Assembly (NCBI GenBank): GCA_038087875.1
Contig: CM075977.1
Coordinates: 40,920,001-40,984,000 of the forward strand
Length of the DNA: 64,000 nt
Origin: Malacoraja senta
Lineage: Eukaryota
Direction: 5' to 3'
Under the pieces are notes generated by a model that ran no database searches, was not told where the DNA came from, and was given only the letters and a program-made list of their open reading frames with translations. The position numbers were made by a program, and so were the translations under genes. How positions within the stretch are numbered: position 1 is the stretch's first letter; every line of letters begins with the position of its first letter. Positions 329-54,570 of this stretch are shown here, in pieces.

Positions 329-615
329 CTGATGAAAAAGAAAAGTCATATAGGTATATTGCTTTAACAGTTAATGGTGTTCAGCCAATTATTCTGTTGT
401 ACTAGCATAAATAGATGAATATTAATTGCATATCATTAATTCACAGCTTATAGAGTGAAAACAGCAATGAAAAGGCTATCTGGAATATATATAACAATAA
501 AACACTTTTGACCAGTCAGTACTGTTCACGGCAAGAGCAATATAGACAGGTCCCACTACCATATCTGTTTCCCACATCAGAGAGATTTATTTCCCTTCAA
601 GATCAGATTCTATTT

Positions 616-2906
616 TTATGGATTAAGTTACTATATAACAAACCTACAGCTAGAATACTTACTAATAACATATTATCCTCGAAATTTCAACTATCAAGGG
701 GAAATAGACAAGGATGCTCATTATCACCACAGCTGTTTGCTCTCATTATTGAACCGCTAGCAGAAAAAATTAGAATACACCCTGATATTCATGGATATAA
801 TACTAAAGACTCATATAATAAAATATCTTTATACGCGGATGATATATTATTGTATATTACAAAACCTCAAATCACTATACCAAATATATTAAATTTAATT
901 GAAGACTTCGGATCTTTTTCTGGATATAGAATAAATTGGAATAAAAGTGAAATTATGTCAATAAAACCGAAAGATTCAACACATCTTTTAAAATTCCCTT
1001 TTAAAATAGCTACAGAAAAATTTAAATATTTGGGAATCGAAATTACCAGAGCATATCAAGGTATGCTCAGGGCAAATTTTGACCCCCTACTTAATAAACT
1101 GAATACATTAATTAAATTCTGGAAAACGCTTCCGATGTCTTTAATAGGCCGAATAAACGCAATAAAAATGATCTTTTTACCACAAATTTTATACCTATTT
1201 CAATCAATTCCTATATACTTACCTAAGAAGTTTTTTAAAAAACTCGACTCAGATATCACTAATTTTATATGGGACTATAAATCACATAGAATACAAAAAA
1301 CCCATCTGAATAAATCTAAAGTATTGGGGGGTCTAGCACTACCCAATTTTATGTATTATTATTGGTCAGTAAATATTAAAAACATGATTCAACTGATGGA
1401 TAACTCCGCCCAGCAAGTAGACTGGATTGTAATGGAGAAAGAGGATTGCTCCTCTAGAAACATTGGAGCGATCCTCCTCTCTCCAATGAAATTGAATAAC
1501 ATAAACTATAATAAGAACCCAATTATTCATAGTACAATCCGTATTTGGAAACAAATAAAACAAAATTTAAAATTAAGAAACTTATCACTTTTATTACCTA
1601 TAGTCAATAACCCTTCGTTTAGTCCTTCTATTATAGATAAAGCTTATACACAATGGGATAGACTAGGAATTAAAACGCTTGGTGACTTGTATGAAACTGG
1701 AAAATTACTTTCATTTCAACAATTACAAATAAAATATAAACTCGGAAATAATCAATATTTTAAATACTTTCAAATATGTGACTATTTGAAAAAATATATA
1801 AAAGATCATCATAATAACCCAGCAGATGTACTGGACGAGGCAATGCAGATAAAAGCGGAATCAGCAAACTTAATATCATATTTGTACAATATTATCTTAA
1901 ATGCACAAATACCATCTACGGAGGGTATCAGAAGAGACTGGGAACAAGAGTTAGCTATTAAAATTTCAAAGGAAAGTTGGAATGAATACTTATTAAAAGT
2001 GCATAAATGCTCGATTAATGTAAGACACACTTTAATACAATTTAAAATTTTACATAGATTATATTATTCGAAAACTAAAATTCATAAAATTTTCCCAAAC
2101 GTATCATCTATTTGTGATAAATGTCAATCCCAAGAAGCAACTATAGCGCACTCATTTGTCTTCTGTACAAAAATTCAAAAATTTTGGAATGAAATTTTTG
2201 AAATCTTTACAAAGTTATTTAAAACAAGACTGATACCCAAAGCAGAATGGGTTATCTTCGGAATAACGGAAGATGATCCAGAACTAAATGTGTTTCAAAA
2301 GAAATTAATGGATTATGGGTTAATAACTGGAAAAAAGCTAATTCTAAAATTTTGGAAGAAGGCTCCAATACCAACTATAAATATGTGGATTTCAAATATG
2401 TTTGAAACATTACACCTTGAAGAGATAAGACTCCTCCTAGCAGGTAAACCAGATCACTTCCACCTGACGTGGTCTGCATTTATAGAATTATTACAAACAT
2501 AGGGTGCAAAAGTACTTTAAAAAAATAAAAAATTGAGGTCGGGTAAGGGGGGATGATAGTTGAAGAGTTGGTATGTCCTATTTACGTGATGCTCAAAAAA
2601 AAAACATTTGTTTTTCTTTTTTTCTCTTTCTCTTTTCTTTTCTTAGGGCCTATTTCTTAACTCTTTTTCTTTTTGTTTTTAATTTCGTTCTTATAGGGTC
2701 TTCGTCCTTTTTTGTTGTTACATTTTCTACACTTTTCTACACTTGCACTTTTTCCTTCACTTTCTTCTCTCTTTCAATCTTTTCTTTCTCTAGTGTAAAA
2801 AAATAAATAAAGGGAGTACATTAATTGTAAGAAGATATAAATGACGAGTATTAATGTATGTGGTTGTAATGTAATGTACTTCTAATAAATAAAAATTAAA
2901 AAAAAA
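616..2906 (+). mobile_element. 5'-truncated L1-clade LINE (ORF2 RT C-half, Cys-rich C-terminus, 3'UTR, poly(A))
   Basis: ORF 508-2502 contains RQGCSLSPQLF, YADD, KYLG, GGLALPN and the CDKC..H..C knuckle. AATAAA and an A-tail end at ~2906. TSD AAGATCAGATTCTATTT at 599-615 and 2907-2923. Confidence 0.95.
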
Positions 2907-3339
2907 AAGATCAGATTCTATTTCTCTTTGAAAGCCACAAGTTCCCCACCTACCTGTCAGGCAATGCAGTCCCGATGCTCTGTGTATGCACCAACATTCG
3001 TAGCTCATTCACCGGAACTAGTTCCAGCAAAGGCTCATTCCCACTGAGTCCAGAAACTATTCCTCAAAAAAATTGTCTTGAACACAAAATAATTCTCCTT
3101 CTCTGCCCTTTGAACAATTCACATTCGCATCGACATCAAAATATCTTGGCCCCTTTCTTCCTTTCTCTTCCCCCCTCTGGTTTTATTTATTTCATCCTTC
3201 ATCAATTTTGCCACACACATTCTTTTATTTTTTCTCTGTATCTTCAACTTTACAATCCCATATGGCTATTTGCAATTTACCTTCAATCACACAAATAAAA
3301 TCGCTCTTGTATTCCATGCTGCTTAAGTAATCATCAGCG

Positions 3340-4035
3340 CAGCCACTGTACATGGCAGCTGCACCAACAGCCTGTCTTGTCTTTTTCTTCTTTTGCTGTT
3401 TTGGTCTGTGTTTACTTGTATGTTTTAGTGTACCTTTAGTCTTTGTATTATGTGGGGGTGGGGTTAGAGGAAACCTTTTTTAATCTCTTTCCTCAACAGA
3501 GATGTGACTAATTCATCGTATCTCAGTCTGCACTGCGGCTTTAATATCGTGGATCTGGCGTCCCTTTGTTAGGGATCGACTGCAGGAGCTTCGATCGCCC
3601 CGATGCGGGAGTTTCCATCGCCCCAATGCGGGAGCTTCGATCGCCCCGACTGTGGAAGTTTTGATTGCCCCGACCGCGCCAAAACACAAGATGGCCGTGC
3701 TGCCTGCATTGGTGCGAATGTGGACGGCTTTCTGACCGTTCAGGCGGACAGGGAGTGCAGAGAGAGTGACAGCGTACAACTCTGGTCACATCACGGTGAA
3801 GGAGTGTGTGTGTGTGGCCCGGACATTGAATTGATGGCTGTGGGTCACCACTTATGCTGTGTGCCCTGGGGATTTTCACACGCCGCTGTGGTGGCTGTCT
3901 ACGTCTATGTTTCTTTTTTTTAATGTGGTTATATATCTTGTTGCTTTTTTTGTATGACTGTTGGGAAATCAAATTCCTTGTATGTTTACATACTTGGCTC
4001 ATAAATTTATTACAATTACAATTAACTATAACTGA
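3340..4035 (+). mobile_element. Non-autonomous GC-rich retroposon (SINE-like) with internal 23-bp tandem repeats and a (CAATTA)n-like tail
   Basis: Four copies of GGAGCTTCGATCGCCCCGATGCG at ~3585-3677. The head resembles the elements at 4180 and 53590. Ends in a short-repeat tail. Boundaries approximate. Confidence 0.6.
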
Positions 4036-4179
4036 CAACACTTTTTGCAGTTAGAATGGATTTCCCAGATGACATAGTACATTCAATTAACTGTGGTGTA
4101 CTGCAGCCATTTAGTATGCAGGCAATTCTACACATTACATAGGAGTACCATTGAGTCAAGATCTTTCTTGACACAAGGA

Positions 4180-5099
4180 GGAGGAGCCATGTTGGGGAAC
4201 GGCTGCTAACCAGCAGCCGTCTGTTTAATTCACCTTTTTTTAATAGTTTTTAGTGTGTTTAATGTGTCCAGAATGGGGTGAATGGGGGTAATTTTATTCT
4301 TAGTCCCTACCTGGTCGGTGAGGCAGCTTTTTCTCCGGGCTGCCTCGTCGACCCGTCCTCGTGGCCTACCAGCGGGCATGGAGCGCCGTTTCCTGACGGG
4401 GACCGCCCAGCACCTTCAGCTTCGGTCGGCGGCACAGCGCTGGAGCGCTATCGGAGAGCGTAGCGGGCGATGCCTTGCCTGGGTCGCCGCGCTGGATCGA
4501 CACGCTGGAGCTCCGGTATGCGGTGACCGTCGAGATCAACACCTCCGGGCTGCGGGTCTGCGGAGCGACCAGCTGCGCCGACTTTAACATCGGGAGCCTC
4601 GTGGCTCCAAATCCGCGCGGCCCTGTCGGCTTCAGGTGCCATCGATCCCGCTGGGAAACCGGCCGTTCCAGCCGCTGCGAGGACTCTCCCGACGGCCAGG
4701 AACATCGGGCCTCCGTAGAGGCAACGGTGGCGGCCTCGATGGGCCCGACTCTGGGGAGAACTGGGTTGGGGACTGGACATTGTGCCTTCCCCCACAGTGG
4801 TAACCATTGTGGGGGGATGATTTTGTGTGTAGTGTTAAGTGTCTGTGTTAGTCTGTCCAACATGGCGGGCGGAAGGGAGAGTGTACGCTGGCGCGGTTTG
4901 GCTGCCGCTGCTCTCCCTTCATGTTGTGTTTTCTGAATTTTGTTGTTGTCTTTTTTGGATCAAATTTCTGTTTTTAATTTATGTATTGGTGTTGTCTTAT
5001 TTTACTGATTATATGTTTATATGTTTCTTAAATTGTAAGGTGTCCTAGAGACCTCGGTATTAGGCGCCCTTAAAATAAAATCTATTATTATTATTATTA
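4180..5099 (+). mobile_element. Non-autonomous GC-rich retroposon with an AATAAA..(TTA)n L2-like tail
   Basis: CpG-rich body, T-rich 3' region, ends AATAAAATCT(ATT)n. No credible coding motifs. Confidence 0.6.
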
Positions 5100-5101
5100 C
5101 A

Positions 5102-5465
5102 TCATGATTTCAACCTTGGACGTGTCTTCCTTCTTGAGATATGCTGCCTTGGGCAAGGAGTTTGAACCGGCCCGTCGCGGACGGAGCATGGATTCAGCCG
5201 CAGGACTGACTTACCATCACCCGGCGGGGTCACAACGTCAGAAGCCTGGATTGCCTCAGCGCAGAGGGAGAACAAAGAGGGAAGAGACAGAGACTTTAAG
5301 ACTTTTGCCTCCATCACAGTGAGGAGGTGCCTGGTGAACTCACTGTGGTGGACGTTAATTTGTGTTTATTGTGTGTTTTGTTATTTATTATATGTATGAG
5401 TGCAGGCAACGAAATTTCGTTCAGACCGAAAGGTCTGAATGACAATAAAGGAATCTAAGTCTAAG
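5102..5465 (+). mobile_element. 5'-truncated non-autonomous retroposon, same 3' family as 53590-54570
   Basis: The last ~200 bp (GACTTTTGCCTCCATCACAGTGAGGAG...CTCACTGTGGTGGA...AATAAAGG) align with 54360-54542. (TCTAAG)n tail. Confidence 0.75.
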
Positions 5466-7721: not shown

Positions 7722-7844
7722 CTGCAAAAAAGGATTAGTGTCACTAATTTTCAAATGTAGGCAATAATGCAATGGAAAACATAAAAACTAGTTTTTCCAA
7801 TTGCAGAGACCTGAAGAATTAGCAATCTGTAATTTCAGATACAT

Positions 7845-8000
7845 AAATACATAGACAATAGATCGGCCCTTCGAGCCAGCACCGCCATTCAATGTGATCA
7901 TGGCTGATCATCCACAATCAGTACCCCGTTCCTGCCTTCTCCCCATACCCCTTGATTCCACTAGCCCTAAGAGCTCTATCTAACTCCCTTTTGAATACTC
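7845..8000 (-). mobile_element. CR1 3' end fragment
   Basis: Reverse complement of the CR1 3'UTR seen at 11480-11600. Confidence 0.75.
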
Positions 8001-8163
8001 CCCACCCTGACATGATATTCTGAAAAGAAAGACTAGTTTTGTCCAACGGTAAATTAATTTAACTAACAGTGTGTAATTTAGTTACATTAATTTGATTTTA
8101 CTGCAATCTCAAAACAATCAAGAAAACAAAACTAGCATGAAAATTGCCATTTAAAATTATAAG

Positions 8164-8905
8164 GTAGCAAAAATGCTGGAGACTCAGCGGGTGAGGCAGA
8201 GATCAGGTTGGTTATTGCAAACTGAGCTGAGGTGTTGGGCGAAGCGATTGCCAAGCCTGCGCTTGGTCTCACCGATGTAGAGCAGTTGACACCTGGAACA
8301 GAGGATGCAATAGATGAGGTTGGAGGAGGTGCAGGTGAACCTCTGCCTCGCCTGGAAAGACTGCTTGAGTCCTTGGATGGAGTCAAGGGGAGAGGTAAAG
8401 CGACAAGTGTAGCATTTCCTGCAGTTGCAAGGGAAAGTACCAGGGGAGGGGATGGTTTGGGTGGGAAGGGACGAATTGACCAGGGAGTTACGGAGGGAAT
8501 TCCCAGTGGCTCAGCACTTCAACTCCCCCTCCTATTCCGAATCCGTCCTTTCTGTCCTGGGCCTCCGCCATGGCCAGAGTGAGTCCCACTGTAAATTGGA
8601 GGAGCAGCACCTCATATTTCGCTTGGGTAGTTTACACCCCAGTGGTATGAACATTGACTTCTCCAATTTTAGGTAGTCCTTGCTTTCTCCCTCCTTCCCC
8701 TCCCCTTCCCAGCTCTCCCACAGCCTACTGTCTCCGCCACTTCCTTTCTTTTTTCCGCCCCCCTCCCCCCATATCAGTCTGAAGAAGGGTCTCGACCCGA
8801 AACGTCACTTATTCCTTCGCTCCATAGATGCTGCTTCACCCGCTGAGTTTCTCCAGCATTTTTGTCTACCTTCGATTTTTCCAACATCTGCAGTTCTTTC
8901 TTAAA
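8164..8905 (+). mobile_element. Penelope-like element fragment with inverted 5' part, GIY-YIG C-terminus and pseudo-LTR
   Basis: VAQHFNSPS..KLEEQHLIFRLGSLHPSGMNIDF. 8161-8199 is the reverse complement of 8831-8872. Flanked by the 16-bp direct repeat CATTTAAAATTATAAG at 8148-8163 and 8906-8921. Confidence 0.88.
8773..8812 (+). ncRNA. Minimal type I hammerhead ribozyme motif in the Penelope pLTR
   Basis: atcagt-CTGAAGA-a-gggtc(tc)gaccc-GAAA-cg-TC-acttat: intact core, stem II, minimal stem III, GUC cleavage triplet, stem I 5/6 paired. Confidence 0.8.
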
Positions 8906-10865: not shown

Positions 10866-11603
10866 AGTAACACTAGCAAATTTGCAGATGACACAAAGCT
10901 GGGTGGGAGTGTGAACTGCGAAGAAGATGCTAGGTGCAGTAGGCAGTGAAGAAAGTTAATGGCATGTTGGATAACAAGAGGATTTGAGTATAGGTGTAAA
11001 GAGGTTCTTCTACAGTTGTACAGAACCCTGGTGAGACCGCAACTGGAATATTGTGTGCAGTTTTGGTCTCCTAATTTGAGGAAGGACATTCTTGCTATTG
11101 AGGGAGTGCAGCGTAGGTTTACGAGGTTAATCCCTGGGATGGCGGGATTGTCATATGAGGAAAGATTGGAAAGACTGGGCTTGTATTCACTGGAATTTAG
11201 AAGGATGAGAGGGGATCTTATAGACACATATAAAATTATAAAAGGGCTGGACAAGCTAGATGCAAGAAAAATGTTCCCAATGTTGGGGGAATTCAGAACC
11301 AGGGGCCACAGTCTACGAAAAAAGGGGAGGCCATTTAAAACTGAGACGAGAACAAACTTTTTCACCCAGCGAGTTGTGAATTTGTGGAATTCTCTGCCAC
11401 AGAAGGCAGTGGAGGCCAATTCACTGGAGGAATTTAAAATAGAGTTAGATAGAAGTTTTGGGGCTAACGGAATCAAGGGGTATGGGGAGAAGGCAGGCAC
11501 GGATTACTGATTGTGGATGATCAGCCATGATCACAATGAATGGCGGTGCGGGCTCGAAGGGCCGAATGGCCTCCTCCTGCACCTATTTTCTATGTTTCTA
11601 TGT
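10866..11603 (+). mobile_element. CR1 LINE 3' portion
   Basis: FADDTKL remnant, ORF 10959-11510 (LVRPQLEYCVQFWSP, RGDLI), (TTCTATG)n tail. Confidence 0.92.
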
Positions 11604-13039: not shown

Positions 13040-13300
13040 CGTCCAGACGAGAGGGCCTGTACACCTGGCCCCCGCAGCGGCGACTGCGGAGGTTTATGGC
13101 CCCGACCACGGGAACAATGGAGGAGGACTGACTGTACTTTGTGCCTTCCACCAGTGAAGAATGCTGTGGTGGATGTTTGTGTTAAATTTTGATTGTGTAT
13201 TGTGTGTTCTTTTTTGATTGTACTGCTGTTGGCAAAATTCATTTCACTGCACTTTATTGTGTATGCAATGAATACATCTGATTGATTGATTGATTGATTG
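13040..13300 (+). mobile_element. Truncated non-autonomous retroposon with Rex1-like 3' tail and (TTGA)n
   Basis: TTCATTTCACTGCAC..GTGTATG resembles the Rex1 3' end at 26420-26470. GCCTTCCA..GTGGTGGATGTT is shared with the 5102/53590 family. Confidence 0.6.
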
Positions 13301-13517
13301 AGAAGAGGTTGTGGAGCCGAGGCCAGCATAGACGTCATGATCATGAGGCTTGAAGTGCCAAGTGGCCTACTCCTGCTCCTATTTTCGCCCATTTATTGTG
13401 ATTAAAGGTTAAGTACCATTAGATACTTGTCTTCATGTTTATATACTTAAATAAGAAAATTACTAAAGAAAAACACCAAAGTCACATGGAGGGGTGAGAA
13501 TCCTTGGATATGCTTGA

Positions 13518-15980: not shown

Positions 15981-16474
15981 TGAATTCAAGGTTTCAAGGT
16001 CAGTTTATTGTCACATGTACCAGTTAAGGTACAGTGAAATTTGTGTTATCATACAGCCATACTAAGTGAAAAGCAACAAGACACACAACCACATACAAGT
16101 TAACAAAAACATCCATCACAGTGGATTAAAGAAAGGACCAACAAATGACATGATTTTACAAAGGCTTTTCACAAAATTATACATGACCAACTGTCCAGAA
16201 CAGTACGAGACTATACCAAGAGTTTTGGAAAAAATATCAAGCTACAAATTTTCTTCTGACACCAATCTCTAGACTAATTCTGACTAATATTAAATAATGG
16301 AATACTGAAATAGTTTCTGCTATTATAAGCCTGACAACAAATGCACAGGTTCCTACGGAAATCAATAATAAATTATGACTCATCACTATTGGTAAAATTA
16401 TTTAATTATAATGCATCTTTATTGCAACAAAAAAAACCATGGCATTTTATAAACCAAGCATAGAGAAAGACTTA

Positions 16475-24852: not shown

Positions 24853-26471
24853 GGCACTGAGGAGGGTTCTGACACGGGTGAACACGAGGAAAGCTGCAGG
24901 CCCCGATGGCATCTCGGGGCGAGTACTTAAGTCCTGTGCTACGCAGCTAGCTCCGGTGCTCACTACAATATTTAACCTCTCCCTGAACAAGTCCGTGGTC
25001 CCTGCCTGCTTCAAAAAATCCATCATTGTACCGGTACCTAAAAATGCCTCCCCAGCCGGTCTGAATGACTACCGTCCGGTGGCCCTCGCCTCAGTAGTCA
25101 TGAAATGCTTTGAGAGGCTGGTGAAGAAACACATCTGCGCCTTCCTCCCTCACAACATGGACCCGTTACAATTCGCATACCGTCCGAACAGATCCACGGA
25201 CGATGCGGTCTCCCAGGTTTTGCACACCGCTCTCTCTCATCTTGACAGCCAGAAGGGGGGGGGGGGGGGGCTGCTACATGAGGATGCTGTTCATAGACTT
25301 CAGTTCAGCCTTCAACACGATAGTCCCCACCAGACTGGCCGAGAAGCTACTGGAATTAGGGCTCAACACCCCCGTGTGCCTGGGCCCTGGACCTTCTCAC
25401 CGCCAGGCCCCAGGTAGTCAAGATGGGAGGGAATACATCAAAGTCCCTCACCCTGAGCACAGGATCCCCCCAGTGTTGCGTCCTCAGCCCCCTATTGTAC
25501 TCCCTGTACACACATGACTGTGTGGCTAGGTTCAGCTCCAACTCGATAATCAAGTTTGATGATGACACTTGGGTGGTGGGCCTGATCTCAGACAACGATG
25601 AGAAGGCCTACCGGGAGGAGGTGGCTGATCTGGCACTCTGGTGTCAGGACAACAGCCTCCTCTTGAACATCAAAAAAATGAAGGAGCTGATCGTGGACTT
25701 TAGGAGGACACATCATCCGAGGACGTACACACCATTGAGGATAAATGGGGATACTGTGGATAGGGTGAGCTGTTTTAAATACCTGGGAGTCCACATCTCT
25801 GAGGATATGACATGGACATCACACGCTGCAGCACTCGTGAGTAAGGCAAGGCAGCGCCTTTACCACCTCAGGCAATTGAGGAAATTCAGAGTGTCTCCGA
25901 GGATCCTCCAGTGCTTCTACCCAGCGGCTGTGGAAAGCATCTTGTCCAGAAATATTACAATCTGGTTTGGGAATTGCTCTGCCCAGGACAAGAAGGCTCT
26001 GCAGAAAGTAGTGCGTTCGGCCGAACGCACTATGGGAACTTCACTCGCCCCCCTGCAGGAACTATACATCAGAAGGTGCAACTCCAGAGCCAACAAGATC
26101 ATGGGGGACCCCTTCCACCCCTGCAACGGACTGTTCCAGCTGCTACAGTCAGGCAAACGCCTCCGTTGCCATGCTGTGAGAACGGAGAGGTTGAGAAGGA
26201 GTTTCTTCCCAGAGGCCATTAGGACTGTAAACTCCTACCTCTCCAGGGATTAACTTTACTGGACCATTCTACTGGGTTTTTTTTAATTGCTGTTTTTTTC
26301 CCCCTTTTTCCTTCCCCCCACAATATTTAATATGTAAAAGAATATATGATTCTGTTCCATTCTGTTTGTAGTTTGTTTGTTTGTTTGTTTTTTGCACAAA
26401 GTCCGCGAGCATTGCCACTTTTCATTTCACTGCATATCTCGTATGTGTATGTGACGAATAAACTTGACTTG
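24853..26471 (+). mobile_element. Rex1/Babar LINE, 5'-truncated, RT region nearly intact
   Basis: [47 protein letters not shown]. Frameshifts near the poly-G at 25255-25270 and at ~25380. (CTTGA)n tail. ACAAG at both junctions. Confidence 0.93.
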
Positions 26472-26644
26472 ACAAGAGTCAGCAAGTCATGATGTAGCTT
26501 TGTAAGATTTTGGCTTGGCTGAGACCAGAGTATTGCATGCAGTTCTCGTCGCTCTGTAACAATAAGGATATGGAGGTGTTCCAGGTGAGATAGTTTAACT
26601 TGCCATGTTTGGCACAGACATTGTGGGCGAAAAGTTCAGTGTGT

Positions 26645-27462
26645 CTATAATGTGGATAAATGTGAGGGTATCCACTTTGGTGGCAAGAACAGGAAAGTAG
26701 ACTATTATCTGAATGGCGGCCGATTAGGAAAAGGGGAAATTCAACGAGACCTGGGTGTCATAGTACACCAGTCATTGAAAGTAGGCATGCAGGTGCAGCA
26801 GGCAGTGAAGAAAGCGAATGGTTTGTTAGCATTCATAGCAAAAGGATTTGAGTATAGGAGCAGGGAGGTTCTACTGCAGTTGTACAGGGCCTTGGTGAGA
26901 CCACACCTGGAGTATTGCGTACAGTTTTGGTCTCCTAATCTGAGGAAAGACTTTCTTGCCATAGAGGGAGTACAGAGAAGGTTCACCAGACTGATTCCTG
27001 GGATGGCAGGACTTTCATATGAAGAAAGACTGGATAGACTCGGCTCGTACTCGCTGGAATTTAGAAGATTGAGGGGGGATCTTATAGAAATGTACAAAAT
27101 TCTTAAGGGGTTGGACAGGCTAGATGCAAGAAGATTGTTCCCGATGTTGGGGAAGTCCAGAACAAGGGATCACAGTTTAAAGATAAGGGGGAAGTATTTT
27201 AGGACCGAGATGAGAAAAAAAAAATTCACACAAAGAGTGGTGAATCTGTGGAATTCTCTGCCACAGAAAGTAGTTGAGGCCAGTTCATTGGCTATATTTA
27301 AAAGGGAGTTAGATGTGGCCCTTGTGGTTAAAGGGATCAGGGGGTATGGAGAGAAGGCACGTACAGGATACCGAGTTGGATGATCAGCCATGATCATATT
27401 GAATGGCGGTGCAGGCTCGAAGGGCCGAATGGCCTACTCCTGCACCTATTTTCTATGTTCCT
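26645..27462 (+). mobile_element. CR1 LINE 3' portion with an open 243-aa frame
   Basis: ORF 26652-27383 with DLGV, LVRPHLEYCVQFWSP and RGDLI; CR1 3'UTR. Confidence 0.93.
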
Positions 27463-30540: not shown

Positions 30541-30747
30541 ATATAGAGTAAAGGAGGCATATTAAGAGGCTAGAATTAGTATCCAAAAGATGCCTTGGAA
30601 GGTTAAAGAGCTGGAGGAAATTGCAAGGTTAGGGATGAATGAGACTGTGTTGGTAATTGAAAACAATAATGAGAATTAAAAACGGAGTTGATGCTTAAAT
30701 TGGAACCACTGCAGATCAATGAAAGGGATGGAAGAACATGACTTGGG

Positions 30748-31557
30748 ATTGTATTGTATTGTATATCTTTATTGTCATTTCCTAAGTATTCGCATACCCA
30801 GAGGAAACAAAAAAACGTTCCTCAACCAGTGTCCATTCCAGTGTGCAGTAAAAAATAAATAGAAGCAAAAATACATATATCATGAACAAATTAACACTCT
30901 ACTCTACTAAACATCAACAGGCGTTCCGATCGGCAGCGGCACGACAGTGGCTCTGCTGCAGTGTGTCCAGGTTGGTGGTTGGTGCACGATACTTTGGCAG
31001 GGGACAAAGTCCGTTTATCAGTCTTATAACCTGCGGGAAGAAGCTGATGAGCATCCTGCTGGTTTTGCACCTAATGCTCCGGTACCTCTTCCCAGATGGC
31101 AGGATGGAGAATATGTGATGCGATGGGTGGTGAGGGTCTTTGATGATGGAGATGGCTCTGCTGATACATCTCTTCCTGTATATGTCCAGCAGGAAAGGGA
31201 GTGGAGCACCAATAATCCTGCTGGCGGTCTTCACAATCCTGTCTAGTTGGTGCCGTTCGTACGCCTTGCAGCTCCCGAATCAGGAAGTGATGCCGTAGGT
31301 TAATGAGCTCTCGATTGTCCCCCTATAAAAAGTTCGTAGGTGTGTAGTGGGGAGATCTGCTTTACGTAGTCTTCGGAGAGGGTGTAGTCGCTGCTGGGCT
31401 CTCTTGACCAGTGCTGTGGTGTTGGTCGTGGACGTCAGGTCATCTGACAGGTGGAGTCCTAGGAACTTCACACTGTTGACCCTTTCCACATCAGCTCCAT
31501 CGATGTGCAGAGGTGTATGGTGTTATTTTCCCGCCCTCCTGAAGTCAACCACCATCC
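30748..31557 (-). mobile_element. Rex1/Babar LINE 3' fragment
   Basis: VKFLGLHLSDDL..AQQRLHPLRRL..DPHHPSHHIFSILPSGKRYRS..SFFPQ; (CAATA)n tail. Confidence 0.9.
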
Positions 31558-31885
31558 CTTAGTTTTTCCCACGTTGAGAATGAGGTGATACTGTATGTGG
31601 TCTAAAACCTGTCTCATTTATATTACAAACAGTTTGGCTCAACACAAGGAGAGGGAAGAAGTCGGTTGTTAAAGAACAGATTATTTTTAAACAAGCATCA
31701 AAGACAATGCTTTGGTCTTCCAAATATCCACATTCTTGTGGCACAGATCACCAAATAATTAATATATACGAATAGGATTAATGATAATAAAGAATAAAGG
31801 TAATCACTAAAATGACATAAAATTCCAACTGAACGTTTGCAAAGGATGAAAATGAAGAATATTCTACTTTATTTTGTTTTCGTAT

Positions 31886-33689: not shown

Positions 33690-34178
33690 TAAAGTTGATG
33701 AAATCACTTCATTATTAACTTCCACCCTGTCCTCAAATTCACTTGGTCTATCTTTGAAACCTTTTTCCCCTTTCTCGAACCCTTCTTCTCCATCACAGGG
33801 GACCGACCAATGATTGATATCTACTATAAACGCATAGACTCCGACAGTTACCATGACTAGAACTTGTCCTCCCTGCTTCTTGCAAGGATTCCATGCTCAC
33901 ACTCAATTTCTACAACTTCGCTGCATCCGCTTCTAAGATAAGGCTTTTCACAGATGTCCTGTTTTTTCAGTAAATGTGGCTTTCCCCATTGTTGCAGATG
34001 GAGCCCTCTCCCACATCTCCTCTGTGGTGAGATGAGGCTTTCCATTCCATTCGATATGTCCTCTTTCTGTAGAAAACATGGTTTTCCCCCTCCTGTCATA
34101 GATATATCCCTCATCCATGTCACCTGTATCCTTTAGTTCTGCTCTTGCTCCCCCTTCCCCCAGACGGAACAAGGATAG
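33690..34178 (+). mobile_element. Degenerate Penelope-like RT fragment (host of the DIRS; resumes at 38977-39135)
   Basis: FHPVLKFTWSI..PFLE..IDIYYK remnant. 34110-34178 joined to 38977-39065 aligns with the Penelope copy at 44740-44885. Confidence 0.75.
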
Positions 34179-34690
34179 TAAGATTAAACGAGAACTTACC
34201 TAAGTTTGAAGTTTGATCTTTATTTTATGAGGAGTTACGTAGGTGATTACGTGAAGAAGAAGCCCGTCAGTGCGCCTGCGCGTCAATCTTCAAAGCAGCG
34301 GTGTGAAATCACAAAAAACAAGAACCGAAGTAATATAGTCTCATACTAAAACGAGTAATACAAGAACTTCCATCTGACCTTTATGATAGAGGGTAGGGTC
34401 GTGGCGGGCACGTAATCACCTACGTAACTCCTCATAAAATAAAGATCAAACTTCAAACTTAGGTAAGTTCTCGTTTAATCTTACTATTTTACTTCGGAGT
34501 CACGTGAGTGACTACGTGAAGATTTTAAAGCTTTGTGATTTCATGCCGTGGATCAATCCCGGCTTCTCACTGCATAGATTGACTCGGAACGAGAATAATC
34601 AATCATGCATTCATAATAACATTTGTACCACAAATGCAGTAATTCATTTCAAGAATGAAATGAATCAGATCCCCTTTAAACCAGAGGAAT

Positions 34691-39747: not shown

Positions 39748-42700
39748 AAGCGAGTTTGGTATCTGGTGCACGCAATGAATCATTAGATTTTGTCAAAGGT
39801 CATTCAGGATAAACAAAGAATTTATTGGATTCATACAAGCGATCAACCACCGAAAGCAAGCCACGTTATCTCCGACTGCCTTAATGCTGTAGCACACATA
39901 GCAAGCTTTGCCCCAATACATCAGTAGGCAGACCGACCTCCATGCCACCTATTGACCTTCACCAAATTAAACCCTTAGTGTTAATGCAACCATAATGTAA
40001 ACTGCGTGCTTAGGGCCCATTCCAAACTGAATAGTTCACTGTGAAACATAGAAAATAGGTGCAGGAGGCCGCCTTTCAGCCCTTCGAGCCAACACCACCA
40101 TTCATTGTGATCATGGCTGATCGTCCCCAATCAATAACCCGTGCCTGCCTTATCCCCATATCCCTTGATTCCACTAGCCCCTAGAGCTATATTTAACTCT
40201 CTCTTAAATCCATCCAGTGATTTGGCCTCCACTGCCCTCTGTGGCAGGGAATTTCACAAATTCACAATTCTCTGGGTGAAAAAGTTTTTTCTCACCTCAG
40301 TCTTAAATGGCCTCCCCTTTATTCTAAGACTGTGTTCTGGACTCGCCCAACATTGGAAAAAAATTTCCTGCATCTAGGTTCTCCAGTCCTCTTATAATTT
40401 TATATGTTTCTATAAGATCCCCCTCATCCTTCTAAACTCCAGTGAATACAAGCCTAGTCTTTTCAATCTTTCCTCATGACAGTCTCGGCATCCCAGGGAT
40501 CAATCTCGTGAACCTACGCTGCACTGCCTCAATCACAAGGATGTCCTTCCTCAAATTAGGAGACCAAAACTGTACACAATACTCCAGATGTGGTCTTACC
40601 AGAGCCCTATACAACTGCAGAAGAACCCGTTTACTCCTATACTGAAATCCTCTTGCTATTCCATTAGCTTTCTTCACTGCCTGCTGTACCTGCACGCCAA
40701 CTTTCAGTGACTGGTGTACAAGGACACCCAGGTCTCTCTGTACCTCCCCCTTACCTAACCTAACCCCATTGAGATAATAATCTGCGCCCTTGTTTTTGCC
40801 ACCAAAGTGGATAACCTCACACTTATCTATATTATACTGCATCTGCCATGCATCTGCCCACTCACTCAACCTGTCCAGGTCACCCTGCAACCTCCTAACA
40901 TCCTCTTCACAGTTCACACTGCCACCCAGCTTTGTGTCATCCGCAAACTTGCTAGTGTTGCTACTAATTCCCTCTTCCAAATCATTAATATATATGGTAA
41001 ACAGTTGCGGGCCCAACACCGAGCCTTGCGGCACTCCACTCGCCACTGCCTGCCATTCTGAAAAGGACGCATTCACTCCCACTCTTTGCTTCCTGTCTGC
41101 CAACCAATTTTCTATCCACGTCAACACCCTACCCCCAATACCATGTGCTCTAATTTTTGTCACCTGTCTCCCGTGCGGGACCTTATCAAAGGCTTTCTGA
41201 AAGTCTAGATACACTACATCCACTGGCTCCCCTTCATCCATTTCTCTTGTCACATCCTCAAAAATTCCAGAAGATTAGTCAAGCATGATTTTCCTTTCAT
41301 AAATCCATGCTGACTTGGACTAATCCTTTTACTGCTATCCAAATGCCCCATTATTACCTCTTTAATAATTGACTCCAGCATCTTTCCCACCACCGAAGTC
41401 AGGCTAACTGGTCTGTAATTCCCCGTTTTCTCTCTCGCTCCTTTCTTGAAAAGTGGGCTAACATTAGCTATCCTCCAATCCACAGGAACTGATCCTGATG
41501 AAAATGATCACCAATGCGTCCACTATTTCTACCTGAGGACCCTGGGATGCAGACCATCAGGCCCAGGGGATTTATCATCCTTCAGTCCCATTAGCCTACC
41601 CAATACTATTTCTCGCCTAATGAAAATTTCTTTCAGTTCCACTACCCCCTTAGATCCTCTGTCCTCCAGGACCGCCTCCCTCAAGTCTCAGACAGCGGAG
41701 GCGTGAGTTCAAAAGCACCATTCCCCGCTGACTTGAGTAGCGCTAAGCTAAATGCAACAAAGTCTGAACATTTAACATTGTTATCACACCCTGCAATGAA
41801 GTGGACCTGAGCACTCACTCACCAGAAGCTGCTGCTATTGTTGTCCCCATCGGTCTGGTCTGGTCTCAAGACAATGGCCGAGGTGAAGGGAGTCAGGTCG
41901 AGTCCGGCATCACCTGCCAAATCACTGCAGATGGTCTCGGAGTAAACCACCTGATTGCCTGGCTCCCCACCGCAGCCAAAGTCAGGCAGCAACTATCCCC
42001 ACCGGAGAGGCTGCAAACACCACCCCTGCAACCATGTGCAAACGTGAACAGCTCTCTGTGGGGCGTGGGAGGGTTGCAGCACCCTAGCTAGGTCCAAAGT
42101 CAATGAGGCAAAGTGGGGAGACCTCCGACTTGGGTGAAACAGCAGCTATGCAGGACATTTTGATGCGCCCACTAAGGTGGGTTCCCCACAACGCAAATCT
42201 TGCCTGTGCCAACATGCCGAAATATACTCTTTATGTTGGGATAACTGTTAGTTTTAGTCTAAGTGGCTCCCATGAGAGTGGAAAAGCAGAAGAAAATAGT
42301 AGGTTTATGTAGCAGTAACGTCTCTGTGAGCTGAGCTCGTTCTCTATCTCTGTGAGCTCCTACTGATTGCTTGCCTTCATGGTTAAATATTTACTATGCT
42401 GCAGCAGCCACCAGCCAGTAGGTATTAATCAGAAATCCTGTGTGATTAATCCAACGAATTTTCTTCCACGACTTGACTAGCCCCAAGCTAATTGTAGCAA
42501 ATCAACTGATTAGTCAGGAGAACAAACGTGCATACAGCCCATGGACTAGTATAGTAAGAGATGAAAACCCCACAAATACTTTCCATATTATCTATTGATA
42601 GTTATAGAAATCATACATTTCATTTCTTCCTCCTCCCCCACTCCAAAAAACCCCCAATAAAAAATGGTTGTTATTCATCGTCACGATCTTGCTCACTGAC

Positions 42701-44569: not shown

Positions 44570-45610
44570 TTCTTCCCACCCTACTTCCTGTAAAGACTCT
44601 ATCCCCTTCTCCCAATTCCTCGTCTACGCCGCATCTGACCCAGGATGAGTTTTCCATACCAGGTCATCGGAGATGTCCTCATTCATTAGGGAACGGGGGT
44701 TCCCCTCTTCCATTATAGATAAGGCTCTCACTAGGGTCTCCTCGATATCCCCCAGCTCCACTCTTGCTCCCCCTCCCCCATTCGTAAGAAAGACAGAGTC
44801 CTCCTTGTCCTCACCTTCTACCCCATCAGCTGTCGCATGCAGCATATAATCCTCTGACATTTTAGCCACCTCCAACGGGATCCCACATCGTCCCATCTCC
44901 ACCCCTTTCAGCTTTCCGCAGAGACCGTTCCCTCCACAACTCCCTGGTCAACTCATCCCTTCCCACACAAACCATCCCCTCCCCAGGTACTTTCCCCTGC
45001 AACCGCAGGAGATGCAACACCTGTCCCTTTTCCTCCCCCATCGACTCCGTCCAAGGACCCCAGTTTTTTCAGGTGAGGCAGAGGTTCACTTACACCTCCT
45101 CCAACCTCATCTACTGTATCCACTGTTCCAGGTGCCAACTATATATCGGCGAGACCCAGCGCAGGCTAGGCGATAAACACCTCCGCTGTTTCGCTGAACA
45201 CCTCCACTCATTTCGCTTTAACCTACCTGATCTCCCGGTTGCTCAGCACTTTAACTCACCCTGCCATTCCCATTTGAGCGTTCTGTCCTGGGCCTCCTCC
45301 ATTGTCACAGTGAGGCTCAGCGCAAATTGGAGGATCAGCACCTCATATTTTGTTGGGTAGCTTACACCCCAGTGGTATGAACATTGACTTTTCTAACTTC
45401 AAATAGCCCTTGCTTTCCCTCTTTCTCCATCCTCTCCCCCTTCCTAGTTCTCCCACCAGTCTTACTGTCTCCGACTACATTTTATCTCTGTACCACCCAC
45501 TCCCCTGACAACAGCCTGAAGAAGGGTCTCGACCTGAAACGTCACCCATTCCTTCTCTCCAGAGATGCTGCCCATCCCGCTGAGTTACACCAGCATTTTG
45601 TGCCTACCTC
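44570..45610 (+). mobile_element. Penelope-like element (Neptune-type) 3' part with GIY-YIG endonuclease remnant and pLTR hammerhead motif
   Basis: CNRRRCNTC Cys cluster, NLIYCIHCSRCQLYIGET..RL..FAEH, VAQHFN. CTGAAGA..GAAACGTC at 45516-45543. Confidence 0.9.
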
Positions 45611-46558: not shown

Positions 46559-46654
46559 GCTGGGCTGCATTGCAAATAAAAAAGGCCACCTTCTTGTCCT
46601 CCAAGCAAAAGTTGCCAGATTTAACTGACATGAGAAATAGTTATAATTAATTAT

Positions 46655-47475
46655 AGACAATAGGTGCAGGATTAGGCCATTCAGCCCTTCGAGCCAGCAC
46701 CGCCATTCAATGTGTCCATGCCTGATCATTCCCAATCAGTACCCCGTTCCTGCCTTCTCCCTGCATCCTCTGACTCTGCTACCTTTAAGAGCCCTATCTC
46801 GCTCTCTCTTGAAAGTATCCAGAGATGTATCTTGAAAGTATCCAGAGAACCGGCCTCCACAGCCCTCTGAGGTAGAGAATTCCACAGACTCACAACTCTC
46901 TGTGAGAAAAAGAGTTTCCTCGTCTCCGTTCTAAATGGCTTACCCCTTATTCTTAAACTGTGGCCCCTGGTTCTGGACTCCCCCAACATCGGGAACATGT
47001 TTCCTGCCTCTAGCGTGTCCAAACCCTATCATCCTACTAAACTCCAGAGTATACAGGCCCAGCGGCTCCATTCTCTCAGCATATGACAGTCCCGCCATCT
47101 CGAGAATTAACCTTGTCAACCTACGTTGCACTCCCTCAACTGCATACAATACTCCAGGTGTGGTCTCATTAGGCCCTATACAACTGCAGAAGGACCTCTT
47201 TGCTCCTATACTCAACTCCTCTTGTTATAAAGGCCAATATGCCATTCGCTTTCTTCACTGCCTGCATGCTTACTTTCATTGACTGATGAATAAGGACCCC
47301 CCAGATCCCGTTGTACTTCCCTTTTCCCAACTTGACACCATTTAGATAGTGATCTGCCTTCCTGTTTTTGCTACCAAAGTGGATAACCTCATATTTATCC
47401 ACATTAAATTGCATCTGCCATGCATCTGCCCCACTCATCCAACCTGTCCAAGTTACCCTGCATTCTCATAGCATC
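46655..47475 (-). mobile_element. CR1 LINE 3' portion, degenerate
   Basis: WQMQFNVDK.EVIHFG, VQRRLTRLI, FFSQRVVSLWNSLP. Confidence 0.9.
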
Positions 47476-48710: not shown

Positions 48711-48899
48711 AAAGGTGATTCAATCAAATTCATGAGACGTGATCTTCCACTTACAAAGCCATGCTATCCCTAATCAACTCGTGAGTCCAAATGCATCTGT
48801 ATTTTGCCCCTCAGAATCTTGTCCAGAACATTTCCTACCAAAGGTTGGACCTACTCATCTATAGTTCCCATGTTTTACTTTGTAGCCCTTCTTAGGCCC

Positions 48900-49350: not shown

Positions 49351-49621
49351 NNNNNNNNNNNNNNNNNNNNNNNNNNNNNNNNNNNNNNNNNNNNNNNNNN
49401 NNNNNNNNNNNNNNNNNNNNNNNNNNNNNNNNNNNNNNNNNNNNNNNNNNNNNNNNNNNNNNNNNNNNNNNNNNNNNNNNNNNNNNNNNNNNNNNNNNNN
49501 NNNNNNNNNNNNNNNNNNNNNNNNNNNNNNNNNNNNNNNNNNNNNNNNNNTCTTTTTATGCTTTATCTGATGGGATAAATTGCAGACATTATTTTTTAAA
49601 TCTCAAAATTTGTAACATTGC

Positions 49622-52980: not shown

Positions 52981-53087
52981 CTGTGTTTGGGGGGTGGTTA
53001 GTGTGAGTGTGATGCCGCAGCCTCCCTCCCCCCCCCCCCCCCGCAAACGCACGTTGGGGAAACAGCCCGCCAACAGTCTCTCTGTCT

Positions 53088-53589: not shown

Positions 53590-54570
53590 CTTCCGGAGTG
53601 GTGGCGCGGCCCTGGCTGCAGCGGCTCATCGGCAGTCCCGTTTGTTTGTGTTTTTTGTGTTGTTTATTTTGTTTTGGTTAGTCTAGTTTTTGGTTCTTAG
53701 TTTGTGTTTTGGGGGGGTGGGGGGTTGAAACGGGGTTTGCAGTCTCTCCCTGCGGGGGAATGTGACCTTTTTGTCGTATTCCCCTTCTCTGCCTCCGTCT
53801 GCGCTGAGGCCTAATGGAGCTGATGACCTCGAGGCTCCGGAGGCAGAGCCCGTCAGGACTCGCCCTGAGCTCGCTCCCGTGAGGGTGGTCCGGCTCAGGG
53901 CTGGAACAGTGCTCCCGTGAGAGGTTGTGGTGCTCTCGTGAGGGCAGCCAGCCCAAGGGTGGAACGAGGCTCCCGTTGGAGCGGCCGAGCTCGGGGAGGT
54001 GCGGCGCTCGCAGCCCGAGGGAGGTTCGGCGCCCATGTCGGGCGACCCGGCCGGAGGGAGAAGCGAGGCTCAAGTCGGGGCGGCCCGGCCGGAGGGAGAA
54101 GCGACGCCCAAGTCGGGGCGGCCCGGCCCGGGGAAGAGGCGACGCCCATGTCGGGGCGGCCTGGCTCGGGGGAGGTTCGGCACGGTACTCACGTGAGGGT
54201 GGCTGGGACGTTGTTCTGGCGGTGGTGGCCTGAGTCCGGGGTTCGGCCGCGGGCCAGCGGCTGCGTCTGCAGGACTGGTGGGCGGCAGCTTCGACCACCC
54301 CGGGCCGCGGTGTTTGAGCCGCGGGACTGATTTATATCATCGCCCGGGGGGTATCGCCTCAGCGCAGAGGGAGAAGAGGAGGGAAGAGACTGCAGACCAA
54401 AGACTTTTGCCTCCATCACAGTGAGGAGATGCTGGGTGGACTCACTGTGGTGGATGTTAATATGTGTTTATTGTTGTTTTTATTGTATTATATGTATCTG
54501 CTGCAATTTCGTCCAGACTTCGGTCTGAACGACAATAAAGGCATATCTATCTATATCTATATCTATCTAT
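53590..54570 (+). mobile_element. Full-length-looking GC-rich non-autonomous retroposon with ~38-bp internal tandem repeats and (TATC)n tail
   Basis: Head shared with the 3340 element, tail shared with the 5102 element; tandem units at 54030-54175. Confidence 0.75.

What the first reader, a model, noticed from the sequence alone, without database searches (positions are those of the whole stretch)
3340..5099. Family of GC-rich non-coding retroposons sharing a covarying structured head but ending in different LINE tails
Seen: three elements (3340-4035, 4180-5099, 53590-54570) share one layout: short GC start, T-rich tract, G-run, hairpin, GGC(C/T)T(A/T)..TGGA(G/T)C motif, variable CpG-rich body (with tandem repeats in two of them), T-rich 3' region, simple-repeat tail. 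The hairpin changes sequence but keeps pairing: GAGAT-GTGAC..ATCGT-ATCTC (3499-3524), GGGGAAT-GTGAC..GTCGT-ATTCCCC (53755-53784), GTCGGTGAGGCAGC..GCTGCCTCGTCGAC (4314-4352). The tails differ: (CAATTA)n, (TTA)n, (TATC)n. There is no tRNA/5S head, and the T-runs would stop Pol III. Inference: a modular non-Pol III retroposon group with a conserved 5' RNA or promoter module, mobilised by different LINE clades (L2-like and Rex1-like). I do not recognise it as a named family.
Basis: partly seen in the sequence, partly recalled or inferred. Interest (0 to 1): 0.7.

Follow-up and report, generated by a model that had tools for sequence, protein, structure and literature searches.

The report
Skate non-coding L2-dependent retroposon family
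Three gene-less jumping elements of 0.7-1 kb in a skate-like genome share a structured RNA "head" and end in the tails of L2-type LINEs, so they are a long cousin of SINEs without a Pol III head, not a new class of element.

Summary
E1 (3340-4035), E2 (4180-5099) and E3 (53590-54570) share one layout: GC-rich start, T-rich tract, G-run, hairpin, GGCYTW..TGGAKC motif, CpG-rich body, second hairpin, T-rich tract, then a stem-loop with a short-repeat tail.

Three further 5'-truncated copies lie in the window (about 5161-5465, 13040-13302 and 15985-16126 on the minus strand).

The head hairpin has an invariant GUGA/UCGU core with a tandem G.U wobble. Four of its five outer pairs change on both sides without a mismatch. 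In 128 kb of both strands this motif occurs only at these three sites (0.5 expected).

Caveats:
- Only E1 and E3 align significantly (E 2.5e-6). E2 is linked by motif order alone.
All six tails have the L2 layout, and four or five match the tails of two L2 copies in the same window.

No tRNA, 5S, Rfam family or protein domain was found.

Reading: a non-autonomous, L2-mobilised, non-Pol III retroposon family with an SVA-like GC-rich, VNTR-prone core.

This scan has met the same family several times on other DNA of this genome. Genome-wide covariation and the origin of the head remain untested.

The parts
3340..4035 (+). E1, full-length copy (0.70 kb)
   Evidence: Read. Its head aligns with E3's (nhmmer E 2.5e-6).
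3454..3463 (+). E1 G-run GGGGGTGGGG
   Evidence: Identical 10-mer in E3 (alignment).
3499..3524 (+). E1 head hairpin B (9 bp, GUGA/UCGU core)
3537..3555 (+). E1 GGCYTW..TGGAKC motif
3581..3673 (+). E1 23-nt minisatellite (4 units) in the CpG-rich body
   Evidence: TRF. Body CpG o/e 0.86.
3844..3895 (+). E1 hairpin C (outer stem GTCACCAC/GTGGTGGC)
3976..4030 (+). E1 L2-type tail: stem-loop, CATAAA, (TTACAA)n
   Evidence: Weak match to the L2b tail (z 2.3).
4180..5099 (+). E2, full-length copy (0.92 kb) of a distant subfamily
   Evidence: Same motif order as E1 and E3. Its body matches E5 (nhmmer E 1.3e-8). Its head is not significantly alignable.
4275..4288 (+). E2 G-run
4313..4353 (+). E2 head hairpin B (17 bp, same GUGA/UCGU core, inner stem extended)
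   Evidence: z -4.4.
4363..4384 (+). E2 GGCYTW..TGGAKC motif
4789..4815 (+). E2 hairpin C (CCCCCACAGTGG/CCATTGTGGGGG)
   Evidence: z -4.1.
5036..5099 (+). E2 tail: stem-loop, AAAATAAA, (TTA)n
   Evidence: No matching LINE tail in the window.
5161..5465 (+). E4, 5'-truncated copy of the E3 subfamily
   Evidence: 81% identity to E3 over 216 nt. nhmmer E 6.5e-37. Hairpin C arms identical to E3's.
13040..13302 (+). E5, 5'-truncated copy related to E2, with an L2a-type tail and (GATT)n
15985..16126 (-). E6, short 5'-truncated copy (3' arm of hairpin C, T-rich tract, L2a-type tail)
53590..54570 (+). E3, full-length copy (0.98 kb), inserted in an AT-rich satellite
53711..53727 (+). E3 G-run
53754..53785 (+). 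E3 head hairpin B (13 bp)
   Evidence: z -3.7.
53808..53820 (+). E3 GGCYTW..TGGAKC motif
54030..54174 (+). E3 38-nt minisatellite inside a body made of degenerate units of about 38 nt
   Evidence: TRF. Body GC 71%, CpG o/e 0.88.
54413..54453 (+). E3 hairpin C (13 bp)
54506..54570 (+). E3 L2-type tail: stem-loop, GACAATAAAGG, (TATC)n
   Evidence: z -2.9. Match to the L2b tail z 3.4.
24870..26475 (+). L2a: 5'-truncated L2 LINE (RT C-terminal part, 3' UTR, tail with (CTTGA)n). Likely partner type of E5 and E6
   Evidence: Pfam RVT_1 + PF09004. Best protein hits are Leucoraja erinacea, 87-90%. Tail comparison.
30745..31620 (-). L2b: 5'-truncated L2 LINE with tail GACAATAAAG(ATACA)n. Tail type nearest to E3, E4 and E1

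Best explanation
E1, E2 and E3 are full-length copies of a family (more exactly a set of diverged subfamilies) of non-coding, non-autonomous retroposons in a skate genome.

Shown:
- They carry the 3' stem-loop plus short-repeat tail that L2-clade ('stringent') LINE enzymes recognise on their own RNA.
- Copies are often 5'-truncated, as expected of target-primed reverse transcription.

Inferred:
- They are copied in trans by L2 ORF2 proteins.
- Different subfamilies have picked up the tails of different L2 subfamilies.

Modules kept across subfamilies that otherwise share almost no sequence:
- A head of about 200 nt: GC-rich start, U-rich tract, GGGGNGGGG run, hairpin B with an invariant 5'-GUGA/UCGU-3' core holding a tandem G.U/U.G wobble, then GGCYUW..UGGAKC.
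- A CpG-island-like body that readily grows minisatellites.
- Hairpin C (CCAYCAC...GUGGUGG, then AUGUU), just before the U-rich L2-like 3' region.

Inferred from the structure:
- The wobble pairs exist only on the sense strand, and the outer stems covary. The hairpins are therefore most likely RNA elements acting in cis in the element's own cycle: RNA stability, ribonucleoprotein assembly with an L2 that has no ORF1, or template choice.
- The head has no small-RNA origin and holds Pol III terminators. Transcription would be by Pol II from within the element, or by read-through from host genes.
For: Family and layout:
- E1-E3 E 2.5e-6; E2-E5 E 1.3e-8; E3-E4 E about 1e-36; CACTGTGGTGGATGTT within 3 mismatches: 5 sites, all in the E copies, 0.63 expected.

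Hairpin B:
- The motif is unique to the three heads in 128 kb.
- The 4 core pairs are invariant. Outer pairs are T-A/T-A/G-C, A-T/A-T/C-G, G-C/A-T/T-A, A-T/G-C/G-C and G-C x3, with no mismatch.
- The stem is continuous on the plus strand but has a 2x2 internal loop on the minus strand, costing 3.5-4 kcal/mol in E2 and E3.

Hairpin C:
- The arms are 26/26 identical between E3 and E4, although the copies are 81% identical overall and the loop differs at 4 of 15 positions.
- E2 keeps the stem through an A-U to C-G change.

L2 dependence:
- All six tails and both in-window L2 tails fold as a stem-loop just before an AATAAA-like box and a short repeat.
- Tail similarity reaches z 7.7-7.8 for E5 and E6 versus L2a, and z 3.4-4.5 for E3 and E4 versus L2b.
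- Three of the six copies are 5'-truncated.
- ORF2 of stringent-type L2 LINEs binds its own tail stem-loop (Hayashi et al. 2014, PMC4176376).
- Chondrichthyan L2s lack ORF1 (PMC13343379).

Non-coding and no Pol III head:
-.

Bodies:
- GC 57-71% and CpG o/e 0.86-0.99, against 0.49 for the window and 0.36-0.51 for the L2 and CR1 copies.
Against: - Only three heads are available, so the covariation is counted on three sequences and on motifs defined after seeing them.
- E2's head is not significantly alignable to E1 or E3.
- E1's hairpin is weak (-7.6 kcal/mol, z -0.65).
- The 5' hairpin A is convincing only in E2.
- No target-site duplications were found, and the 5' ends are defined only to within about 15 nt.
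- There is no expression data and no direct evidence that any L2 mobilises these elements.
- E2's partner LINE is unknown.
- High CpG content could simply mean the insertions are young.
Confidence: 0.7

Rival explanations
1. The elements are internally deleted L2 LINEs. In this reading the head is the 5' UTR (internal promoter), or another retained piece, of an autonomous L2, and the rest is its 3' UTR. They would then be ordinary deletion derivatives, not a separate modular family.
For: - The 3' 150 nt is clearly L2-like.
- The first 50 nt of E1 resemble the last 45 nt of the ORF2 of the L2 copy at 30745-31620. They share the 9-mer AGCCACTGT and, in the same order, GCTGC and GCCTGT.
- The best local alignments of that L2 3' region fall on the heads of E1, E3 and E2 (z 6.0, 5.6 and 2.7).
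- Deletion derivatives of LINEs are common, for example HAL1 (PMC5753468).
Against: - nhmmer finds no significant L2-to-head similarity.
- The z-scores come from shuffles that do not keep the local T-richness.
- The 3' UTRs of the two in-window L2 copies are only about 200 nt. They lack the G-run, hairpin B, the CpG body and hairpin C.
- No full-length L2 is in the window, so the 5' UTR could not be compared.
Confidence: 0.25
2. The three are not one family. E1 and E3 are related, but E2 is an independent L2-tailed retroposon. Its resemblance (T-rich tract, G-run, a hairpin) would be low-complexity coincidence found after the fact.
For: - The E1+E3 profile gives E2 only E 0.11.
- The covariance model gives E2 5.1 bits, rank 18.
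- blastn finds no E2 hit to E1 or E3.
Against: - E2 has the GUGA/UCGU-core hairpin, which occurs nowhere else in 128 kb.
- The hairpin lies at the same distance from a G-run and from the rare GGCYTW..TGGAKC motif.
- E2 also has hairpin C followed by GATG and a T-rich tract.
- E2 is the top non-self hit of the profile, and the match is colinear.
Confidence: 0.1
3. They are plain 5'-truncated copies of an L2 subfamily with an unusually long, VNTR-bearing 3' UTR. The shared start would be a hot spot of truncation.
For: - There is a weak resemblance between the first 50 nt and an ORF2 end.
- 5' truncation is frequent in this family.
Against: - Three of three head-bearing copies start within about 20 nt of the same point. 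Their upstream flanks are unrelated, AT-rich and non-L2.
- No copy extends into ORF2.
Confidence: 0.07
4. The head is a self-cleaving ribozyme that defines the 5' end. Other scan notes propose this for HDV-like ribozyme-headed mini-retroposons in the same genome.
For: - The 5' end is common to the copies although no promoter is recognisable.
- Earlier scan notes (for example s1-174984) report ribozyme-headed elements in this genome.
Against: - No HDV, CPEB3, hammerhead, twister or other ribozyme family was hit, even at E up to 10.
- Hairpin B lies 140-170 nt inside the element, not at its first base.
Confidence: 0.03

Closest known systems
SINEs that share the 3' tail of an L2-clade LINE (for example eel UnaSINE1/UnaL2 and zebrafish ZfL2 partners; MIR with L2)
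   Same: Non-autonomous and non-coding. The 3' end copies the stem-loop and short-repeat tail of a stringent-type L2, which the LINE ORF2 recognises (PMC4176376, PMC1636434). 5'-truncated copies occur.
   Different: No tRNA, 7SL, 5S or snRNA head and no Pol III promoter. Internal T-runs are present. The elements are 0.7-1 kb, not 0.1-0.5 kb. They have a CpG-island-like, VNTR-prone body. One head type is joined to several tail types.
VNTR composite retrotransposons of hominoids (SVA, LAVA, PVA, FVA)
   Same: Non-coding and about 1 kb or more. Not transcribed by Pol III. A GC-rich central domain forms and varies tandem repeats. They are mobilised in trans by a LINE. The 3' modules are exchangeable (PMC4432496, PMC3287187).
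   Different: SVA-type elements use L1 through a poly(A) tail and make target-site duplications. Their modules are Alu-like and SINE-R or L1 pieces, and they are described as specific to hominoids. Here the partner is L2, the tail is a stem-loop plus microsatellite, and the origin of the head is unknown.
Non-autonomous deletion derivatives of LINEs (for example HAL1)
   Same: They depend on the parent LINE and keep its terminal sequences.
   Different: HAL1 keeps ORF1. Here nothing is coding, and only the last 150 nt or so is demonstrably LINE-like.
HDV-like-ribozyme-headed mini-retroposons noted by this scan in the same genome
   Same: Same genome. LINE-type tails and no Pol III head.
   Different: Those elements are about 140 nt and start at a ribozyme cut site. 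The present elements are 5-7 times longer and have no ribozyme match.

Membership tests
SINE (Pol III-transcribed, small-RNA-derived head) | 5' head derived from tRNA, 7SL, 5S or snRNA, with an internal Pol III promoter | tested here: not met
   ARAGORN finds no tRNA in the window. Rfam finds nothing at gathering score, and only chance-level hits at E up to 10 in the elements.
SINE (Pol III-transcribed, small-RNA-derived head) | No Pol III terminator (4 or more T in a row) inside the transcribed unit | tested here: not met
   Runs of 5-7 T occur in each head and again in the 3' T-rich region.
SINE (Pol III-transcribed, small-RNA-derived head) | 3' tail shared with a partner LINE | tested here: met
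L2-dependent (stringent-type) non-autonomous retroposon | 3' end has a stem-loop followed by a short tandem repeat, as in L2-clade LINEs | tested here: met
   All six copies and both in-window L2 copies fold this way.
L2-dependent (stringent-type) non-autonomous retroposon | Tail sequence similar to that of an L2 present in the same genome | tested here: met
   E5 and E6 versus L2a: z 7.7-7.8. E3 and E4 versus L2b: z 3.4-4.5. E1: z 2.3. E2: no partner found.
L2-dependent (stringent-type) non-autonomous retroposon | No coding capacity of its own | tested here: met
   The five ORFs of 137-206 aa on either strand have no Pfam hit. The two that were searched have no protein relative.
L2-dependent (stringent-type) non-autonomous retroposon | 5'-truncated copies, as left by target-primed reverse transcription | tested here: met
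   E4, E5 and E6 keep only the 3' part.
L2-dependent (stringent-type) non-autonomous retroposon | Mobilisation by L2 ORF2 in trans | not testable with these tools
   Needs a retrotransposition assay.
VNTR composite retrotransposon (SVA/LAVA type) | Central GC-rich VNTR domain | tested here: inconclusive
   Arrays are present in E1 and E3 but none in E2. All bodies are GC- and CpG-rich.
VNTR composite retrotransposon (SVA/LAVA type) | L1-type mobilisation marks: poly(A) tail and target-site duplication | tested here: not met
   Tails are microsatellites after a stem-loop. No duplications were seen at the flanks.
Internally deleted LINE (5' UTR plus 3' UTR) | Head homologous to the 5' UTR of the partner LINE | not testable with these tools
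   No full-length L2 is in the window.
Ribozyme-headed retroposon | Element starts at the cleavage site of a recognisable self-cleaving fold | tested here: not met
   No ribozyme family was hit at E up to 10.

The most novel reading that the evidence does not exclude
The head, and above all hairpin B with its invariant tandem G.U core, would be a portable cis-acting RNA module of a kind not yet described. It would make a Pol II or read-through transcript a good template for ORF1-less L2 enzymes, and it can be combined with the tail of any L2 subfamily. The family would then be an independent, non-primate invention of the SVA-type design: a structured head, a CpG-island VNTR core and an exchangeable LINE-derived 3' module.
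Probability: 0.12. Interest if true: 0.6.

Novelty: new variant of a known kind. Interest (0 to 1): 0.38.

Why it matters
- LINE-dependent parasites are usually thought of as short elements with a Pol III head (SINEs).
- Long, Pol III-independent, VNTR-bearing elements are described essentially only from hominoids (SVA, LAVA).
- An abundant L2-driven counterpart in a cartilaginous fish would show that this design arises repeatedly.
- It would offer conserved RNA hairpins as handles for asking what, besides the 3' tail, makes an RNA a good template for a stringent-type LINE without ORF1.
- The CpG-island-like bodies could also seed regulatory elements across the skate genome.
- As it stands this matters mainly to transposon specialists and to repeat annotation of skate genomes.

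Tried and rejected
Reads and contig tools:
I did not try again, so read laying could not be used.
The two Leucoraja erinacea L2 loci found could not be fetched.

Fishing for other copies:
- Searching the spurious ORFs of E3 and E2 as proteins found nothing.
- Exact-pattern scans from the E3/E4 conserved block found nothing in metagenome contigs or genome contigs.
- A degenerate hairpin-C pattern in metagenome contigs gave 44 loci. All are chance matches or one unrelated repeat in WNF* contigs. They were set aside and not analysed further.

Models and searches within the window:
- A covariance model of the E1+E3 head (R1) did not recover E2.
- Rfam gave nothing and ARAGORN gave nothing.
- The L1-like LINE just upstream (605-2908) ends in poly(A) and has its own target-site duplication, so it is not the source of E1.
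- CR1 copies in the window have a different tail, (TTCTATG)n, and no relation to the elements.
- An exact empty site for E3 could not be derived, because the satellite around it is irregular.
- 5' hairpin A is not consistently supported.
- Head similarity to an L2 ORF2 end remains a lead only.

Full report
**Setting.** The window is repeat-rich vertebrate DNA.
- An L2-type reverse-transcriptase ORF in it (25423-26250) has as best relatives two Leucoraja erinacea proteins at 87-90% identity. Earlier scan notes also call the genome skate-like.
- The window also holds CR1 fragments, an L1-like LINE, a Tc1-type transposase and an intact Helitron ORF.
- LINEs are the most abundant repeat class in the little skate genome (PMC9605692).

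**Observation.** Each has the following parts in order:
- a GC-rich start;
- a T-rich tract of 60-90 nt with runs of 5-7 T;
- a GGGGNGGGG-type run;
- a hairpin;
- the motif GGCYTW..TGGAKC;
- a GC- and CpG-rich body;
- a T-rich 3' region;
- a short-repeat tail.

TRF finds a 23-nt array in E1 and a 38-nt array in E3. No tRNA and no Rfam family is present. The ORFs on either strand have no Pfam domain, and the two that were searched have no protein relatives.

**More copies in the window.**
- E4 (about 5161-5465) is 81% identical to the last 216 nt of E3 (nhmmer E about 1e-36).
- E5 (about 13040-13302) matches the distal body of E2 (E 1.3e-8).
- E6 (15985-16126, minus strand) keeps only the last 140 nt.
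- The 16-mer CACTGTGGTGGATGTT, with up to 3 mismatches, occurs five times in the window: in E1, E3, E4, E5 and E6 (0.63 expected).
- So there are three full-length and three 5'-truncated copies. This pattern is expected of LINE-mediated target-primed reverse transcription.

**Are the heads homologous?**
- E1 and E3 are. nhmmer aligns about 310 nt colinearly at E 2.5e-6, with 51% identity in a global alignment.
- Islands of identity are the G-run, ATGTGAC, TCGTAT and GTCTGCRCTG-GGCYT.
- E2 is not significantly alignable. It is the best non-self hit of an E1+E3 profile and is colinear, but at E 0.11. A covariance model built on E1+E3 gives it 5.1 bits.
- E2's link rests on rare motifs in the same order and spacing (next paragraph), on hairpin C, and on its tie to E5.

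**Hairpin B.** I anchored the three hairpins on the shared core.
- All have 5'-GUGA...UCGU-3', pairing as G.U, U.G, G-C, A-U.
- Going outward from the core, the pairs in E1/E3/E2 are:
  - T-A / T-A / G-C
  - A-T / A-T / C-G
  - G-C / A-T / T-A
  - A-T / G-C / G-C
  - G-C / G-C / G-C
- Four of the five positions therefore change on both sides, with no mismatch.
- RNAalifold on E1+E3 gives the same stem, with two compensatory pairs.
- E2 extends the stem inward by 8 pairs, where E1 and E3 have the loop.
- A scan of both strands of the whole window for this core with at least 4 outward pairs returns only these three sites. Shuffles give 0.52 +/- 0.72.
- The core lies 43-51 nt after the G-run and 33-46 nt before GGCYTW..TGGAKC in all three. 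That motif has 5 matches in 128 kb, three of them here.
- Because of the tandem wobble, the stem is continuous only in the sense-strand RNA. The antisense fold has a 2x2 internal loop and is 3.5-4 kcal/mol weaker in E2 and E3. This argues for an RNA element and against a double-stranded DNA palindrome.
- Weak points: only three sequences, motifs defined after the fact, and an E1 hairpin that alone is no better than shuffled sequence (z -0.65).

**Hairpin C.** Its form is CCAYCAC...GUGGUGG followed by AUGUU.
- Its arms are 26/26 identical between E3 and E4, while the loop differs at 4 of 15 positions and the copies are 81% identical overall.
- E2 keeps the stem with CCCCCAC/GUGGGGG, one change on both sides and one on a single side.
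- In E1 the inner part is replaced by a different paired segment.

**Tails and partner LINE.** Two 5'-truncated L2 copies lie in the window: L2a (24870-26475, plus strand) and L2b (30745-31620, minus strand).
- All six element tails and both L2 tails fold as a stem-loop placed a few bases before an AATAAA-like box and a short tandem repeat.
- E5 and E6 match the L2a tail (z 7.7-7.8, 0 of 300 shuffles). E6 has an L2a-like CTTGA-type repeat.
- E3 and E4 match L2b (z 3.4-4.5). E1 matches it weakly (z 2.3), with a similar GUAUG...AUAC hairpin and a TACAA-like repeat.
- E2 has no partner in the window.
- The CR1 copies end differently, in (TTCTATG)n.
- In stringent-type L2 LINEs the ORF2 protein binds the stem-loop of its own tail (PMC4176376, PMC1636434).
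- So the tails do differ, but as subfamilies of one tail type. Nothing supports a Rex1 partner.

**Bodies.** The bodies have GC of 57-71% and CpG observed/expected of 0.86-0.99. The whole window has 0.49 and the L2 and CR1 copies 0.36-0.51. They qualify formally as CpG islands. They are either young or escape methylation.

**Origin of the head.** This remains open.
- The first 50 nt of E1 resemble the last 45 nt of the L2b ORF2. The best local alignments of the L2b 3' region fall on the three heads.
- nhmmer finds nothing significant, and composition inflates the z-scores, so this is only a lead.
- No ribozyme is detectable.
- No full-length L2 is available for a 5' UTR comparison.

**Mechanism.**
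- Shown: a discrete, non-coding element family with L2-type tails, 5' truncation, two hairpins kept across diverged copies, and no Pol III head.
- Inferred: copying in trans by L2 ORF2 through the tail; exchange of tails between L2 subfamilies; an RNA-level, sense-strand role for hairpins B and C; Pol II or read-through transcription.
- Chondrichthyan L2s lack ORF1 (PMC13343379), so cis-acting RNA structure may count for more in this system. That is speculation.

**Comparison with known kinds.**
- The elements work like SINEs that borrow an L2 tail. They fail the SINE definition on the head, on internal T-runs and on size.
- In design they resemble the hominoid VNTR composite retrotransposons (PMC4432496, PMC3287187). 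They differ in partner LINE, tail type and module origin.
- I file them as a new variant of a known kind: LINE-dependent non-autonomous retroposons.
- Earlier notes of this scan (s1-213380, s1-195562, s1-213396, s1-181372, s1-207034) describe what is evidently the same family on other DNA of this genome and reach the same class. I used them as leads only.

**Limits.**
- Scans of metagenome and prokaryote genome collections found no related locus.
- All statistics therefore rest on six copies in one 64-kb window.
- Abundance, age, expression, catalogue status and genome-wide covariation were not tested here.

Noticed in passing
window 56062-60990 (+), with a 69-nt tandem array at 55934-56885: An uninterrupted 1642-aa ORF has Helitron_like_N and PIF1 helicase domains. 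This looks like an intact Helitron Rep/Hel gene. A 69-nt (23-codon) tandem repeat runs from just upstream of the ORF into its N-terminal part.
   Followed up: partly
window 605-2908 (+): A 5'-truncated L1-like LINE (RVT_1 + zf-RVT, 664-aa open frame) ends in poly(A). It is flanked by a 15-nt target-site duplication, gatcagattctattt.
   Followed up: partly
window 34175-34487: A perfect 79-nt inverted repeat (100% complementary) lies around a 155-nt spacer. It looks like a very young MITE-like element or a hairpin-forming insertion.
   Followed up: no
window 53420-55530: An AT-rich satellite-like repeat has irregular units of about 570-580 nt. E3 is inserted in it. C-rich low-complexity tracts lie beside it (51650-53420, 54719-54818).
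   Followed up: partly
window 8759-8863, 45496-45600, 49678-49729, 53143-53194: Four copies of a short repeat share the block CCATAGATGCTGC..CCCGCTGAGTT..CCAGCATTTT at 83-94% identity. It is probably an abundant cartilaginous-fish SINE.
   Followed up: no
window 10866-11600 (+), 26646-27459 (+), 40043-41253 (-), 46653-47431 (-), 7835-8008 (-): There are several CR1-type LINE fragments with the tail ...GGCCGAATGGCCTCCTCCTGCACCTATTTTCTATGTTTCTATG. They are 76-90% alike.
   Followed up: partly
window 4855-4925: E2 carries an extra GC-rich insert in its 3' T-rich region. It has a 10-bp hairpin (GGAAGGGAGAG...CTCTCCCTTC). The E1+E3 head profile hits just downstream, at 4888-4987 (E 3.2). This may be a partial internal duplication of head-like sequence.
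   Followed up: partly
window 3340-5465: Three copies of the family (E1, E2, E4) sit within 2.1 kb in the same orientation. E4 begins 61 nt after the (TTA)n tail of E2. This may reflect an insertion preference for existing tails or microsatellites.
   Followed up: no
window 48804-49634 (+); N runs at 49351-49550 and 50987-51259: A Tc1/mariner-type transposase ORF (HTH_Tnp_Tc3_2) is interrupted by one of two runs of N. The N runs were left as they are.
   Followed up: no
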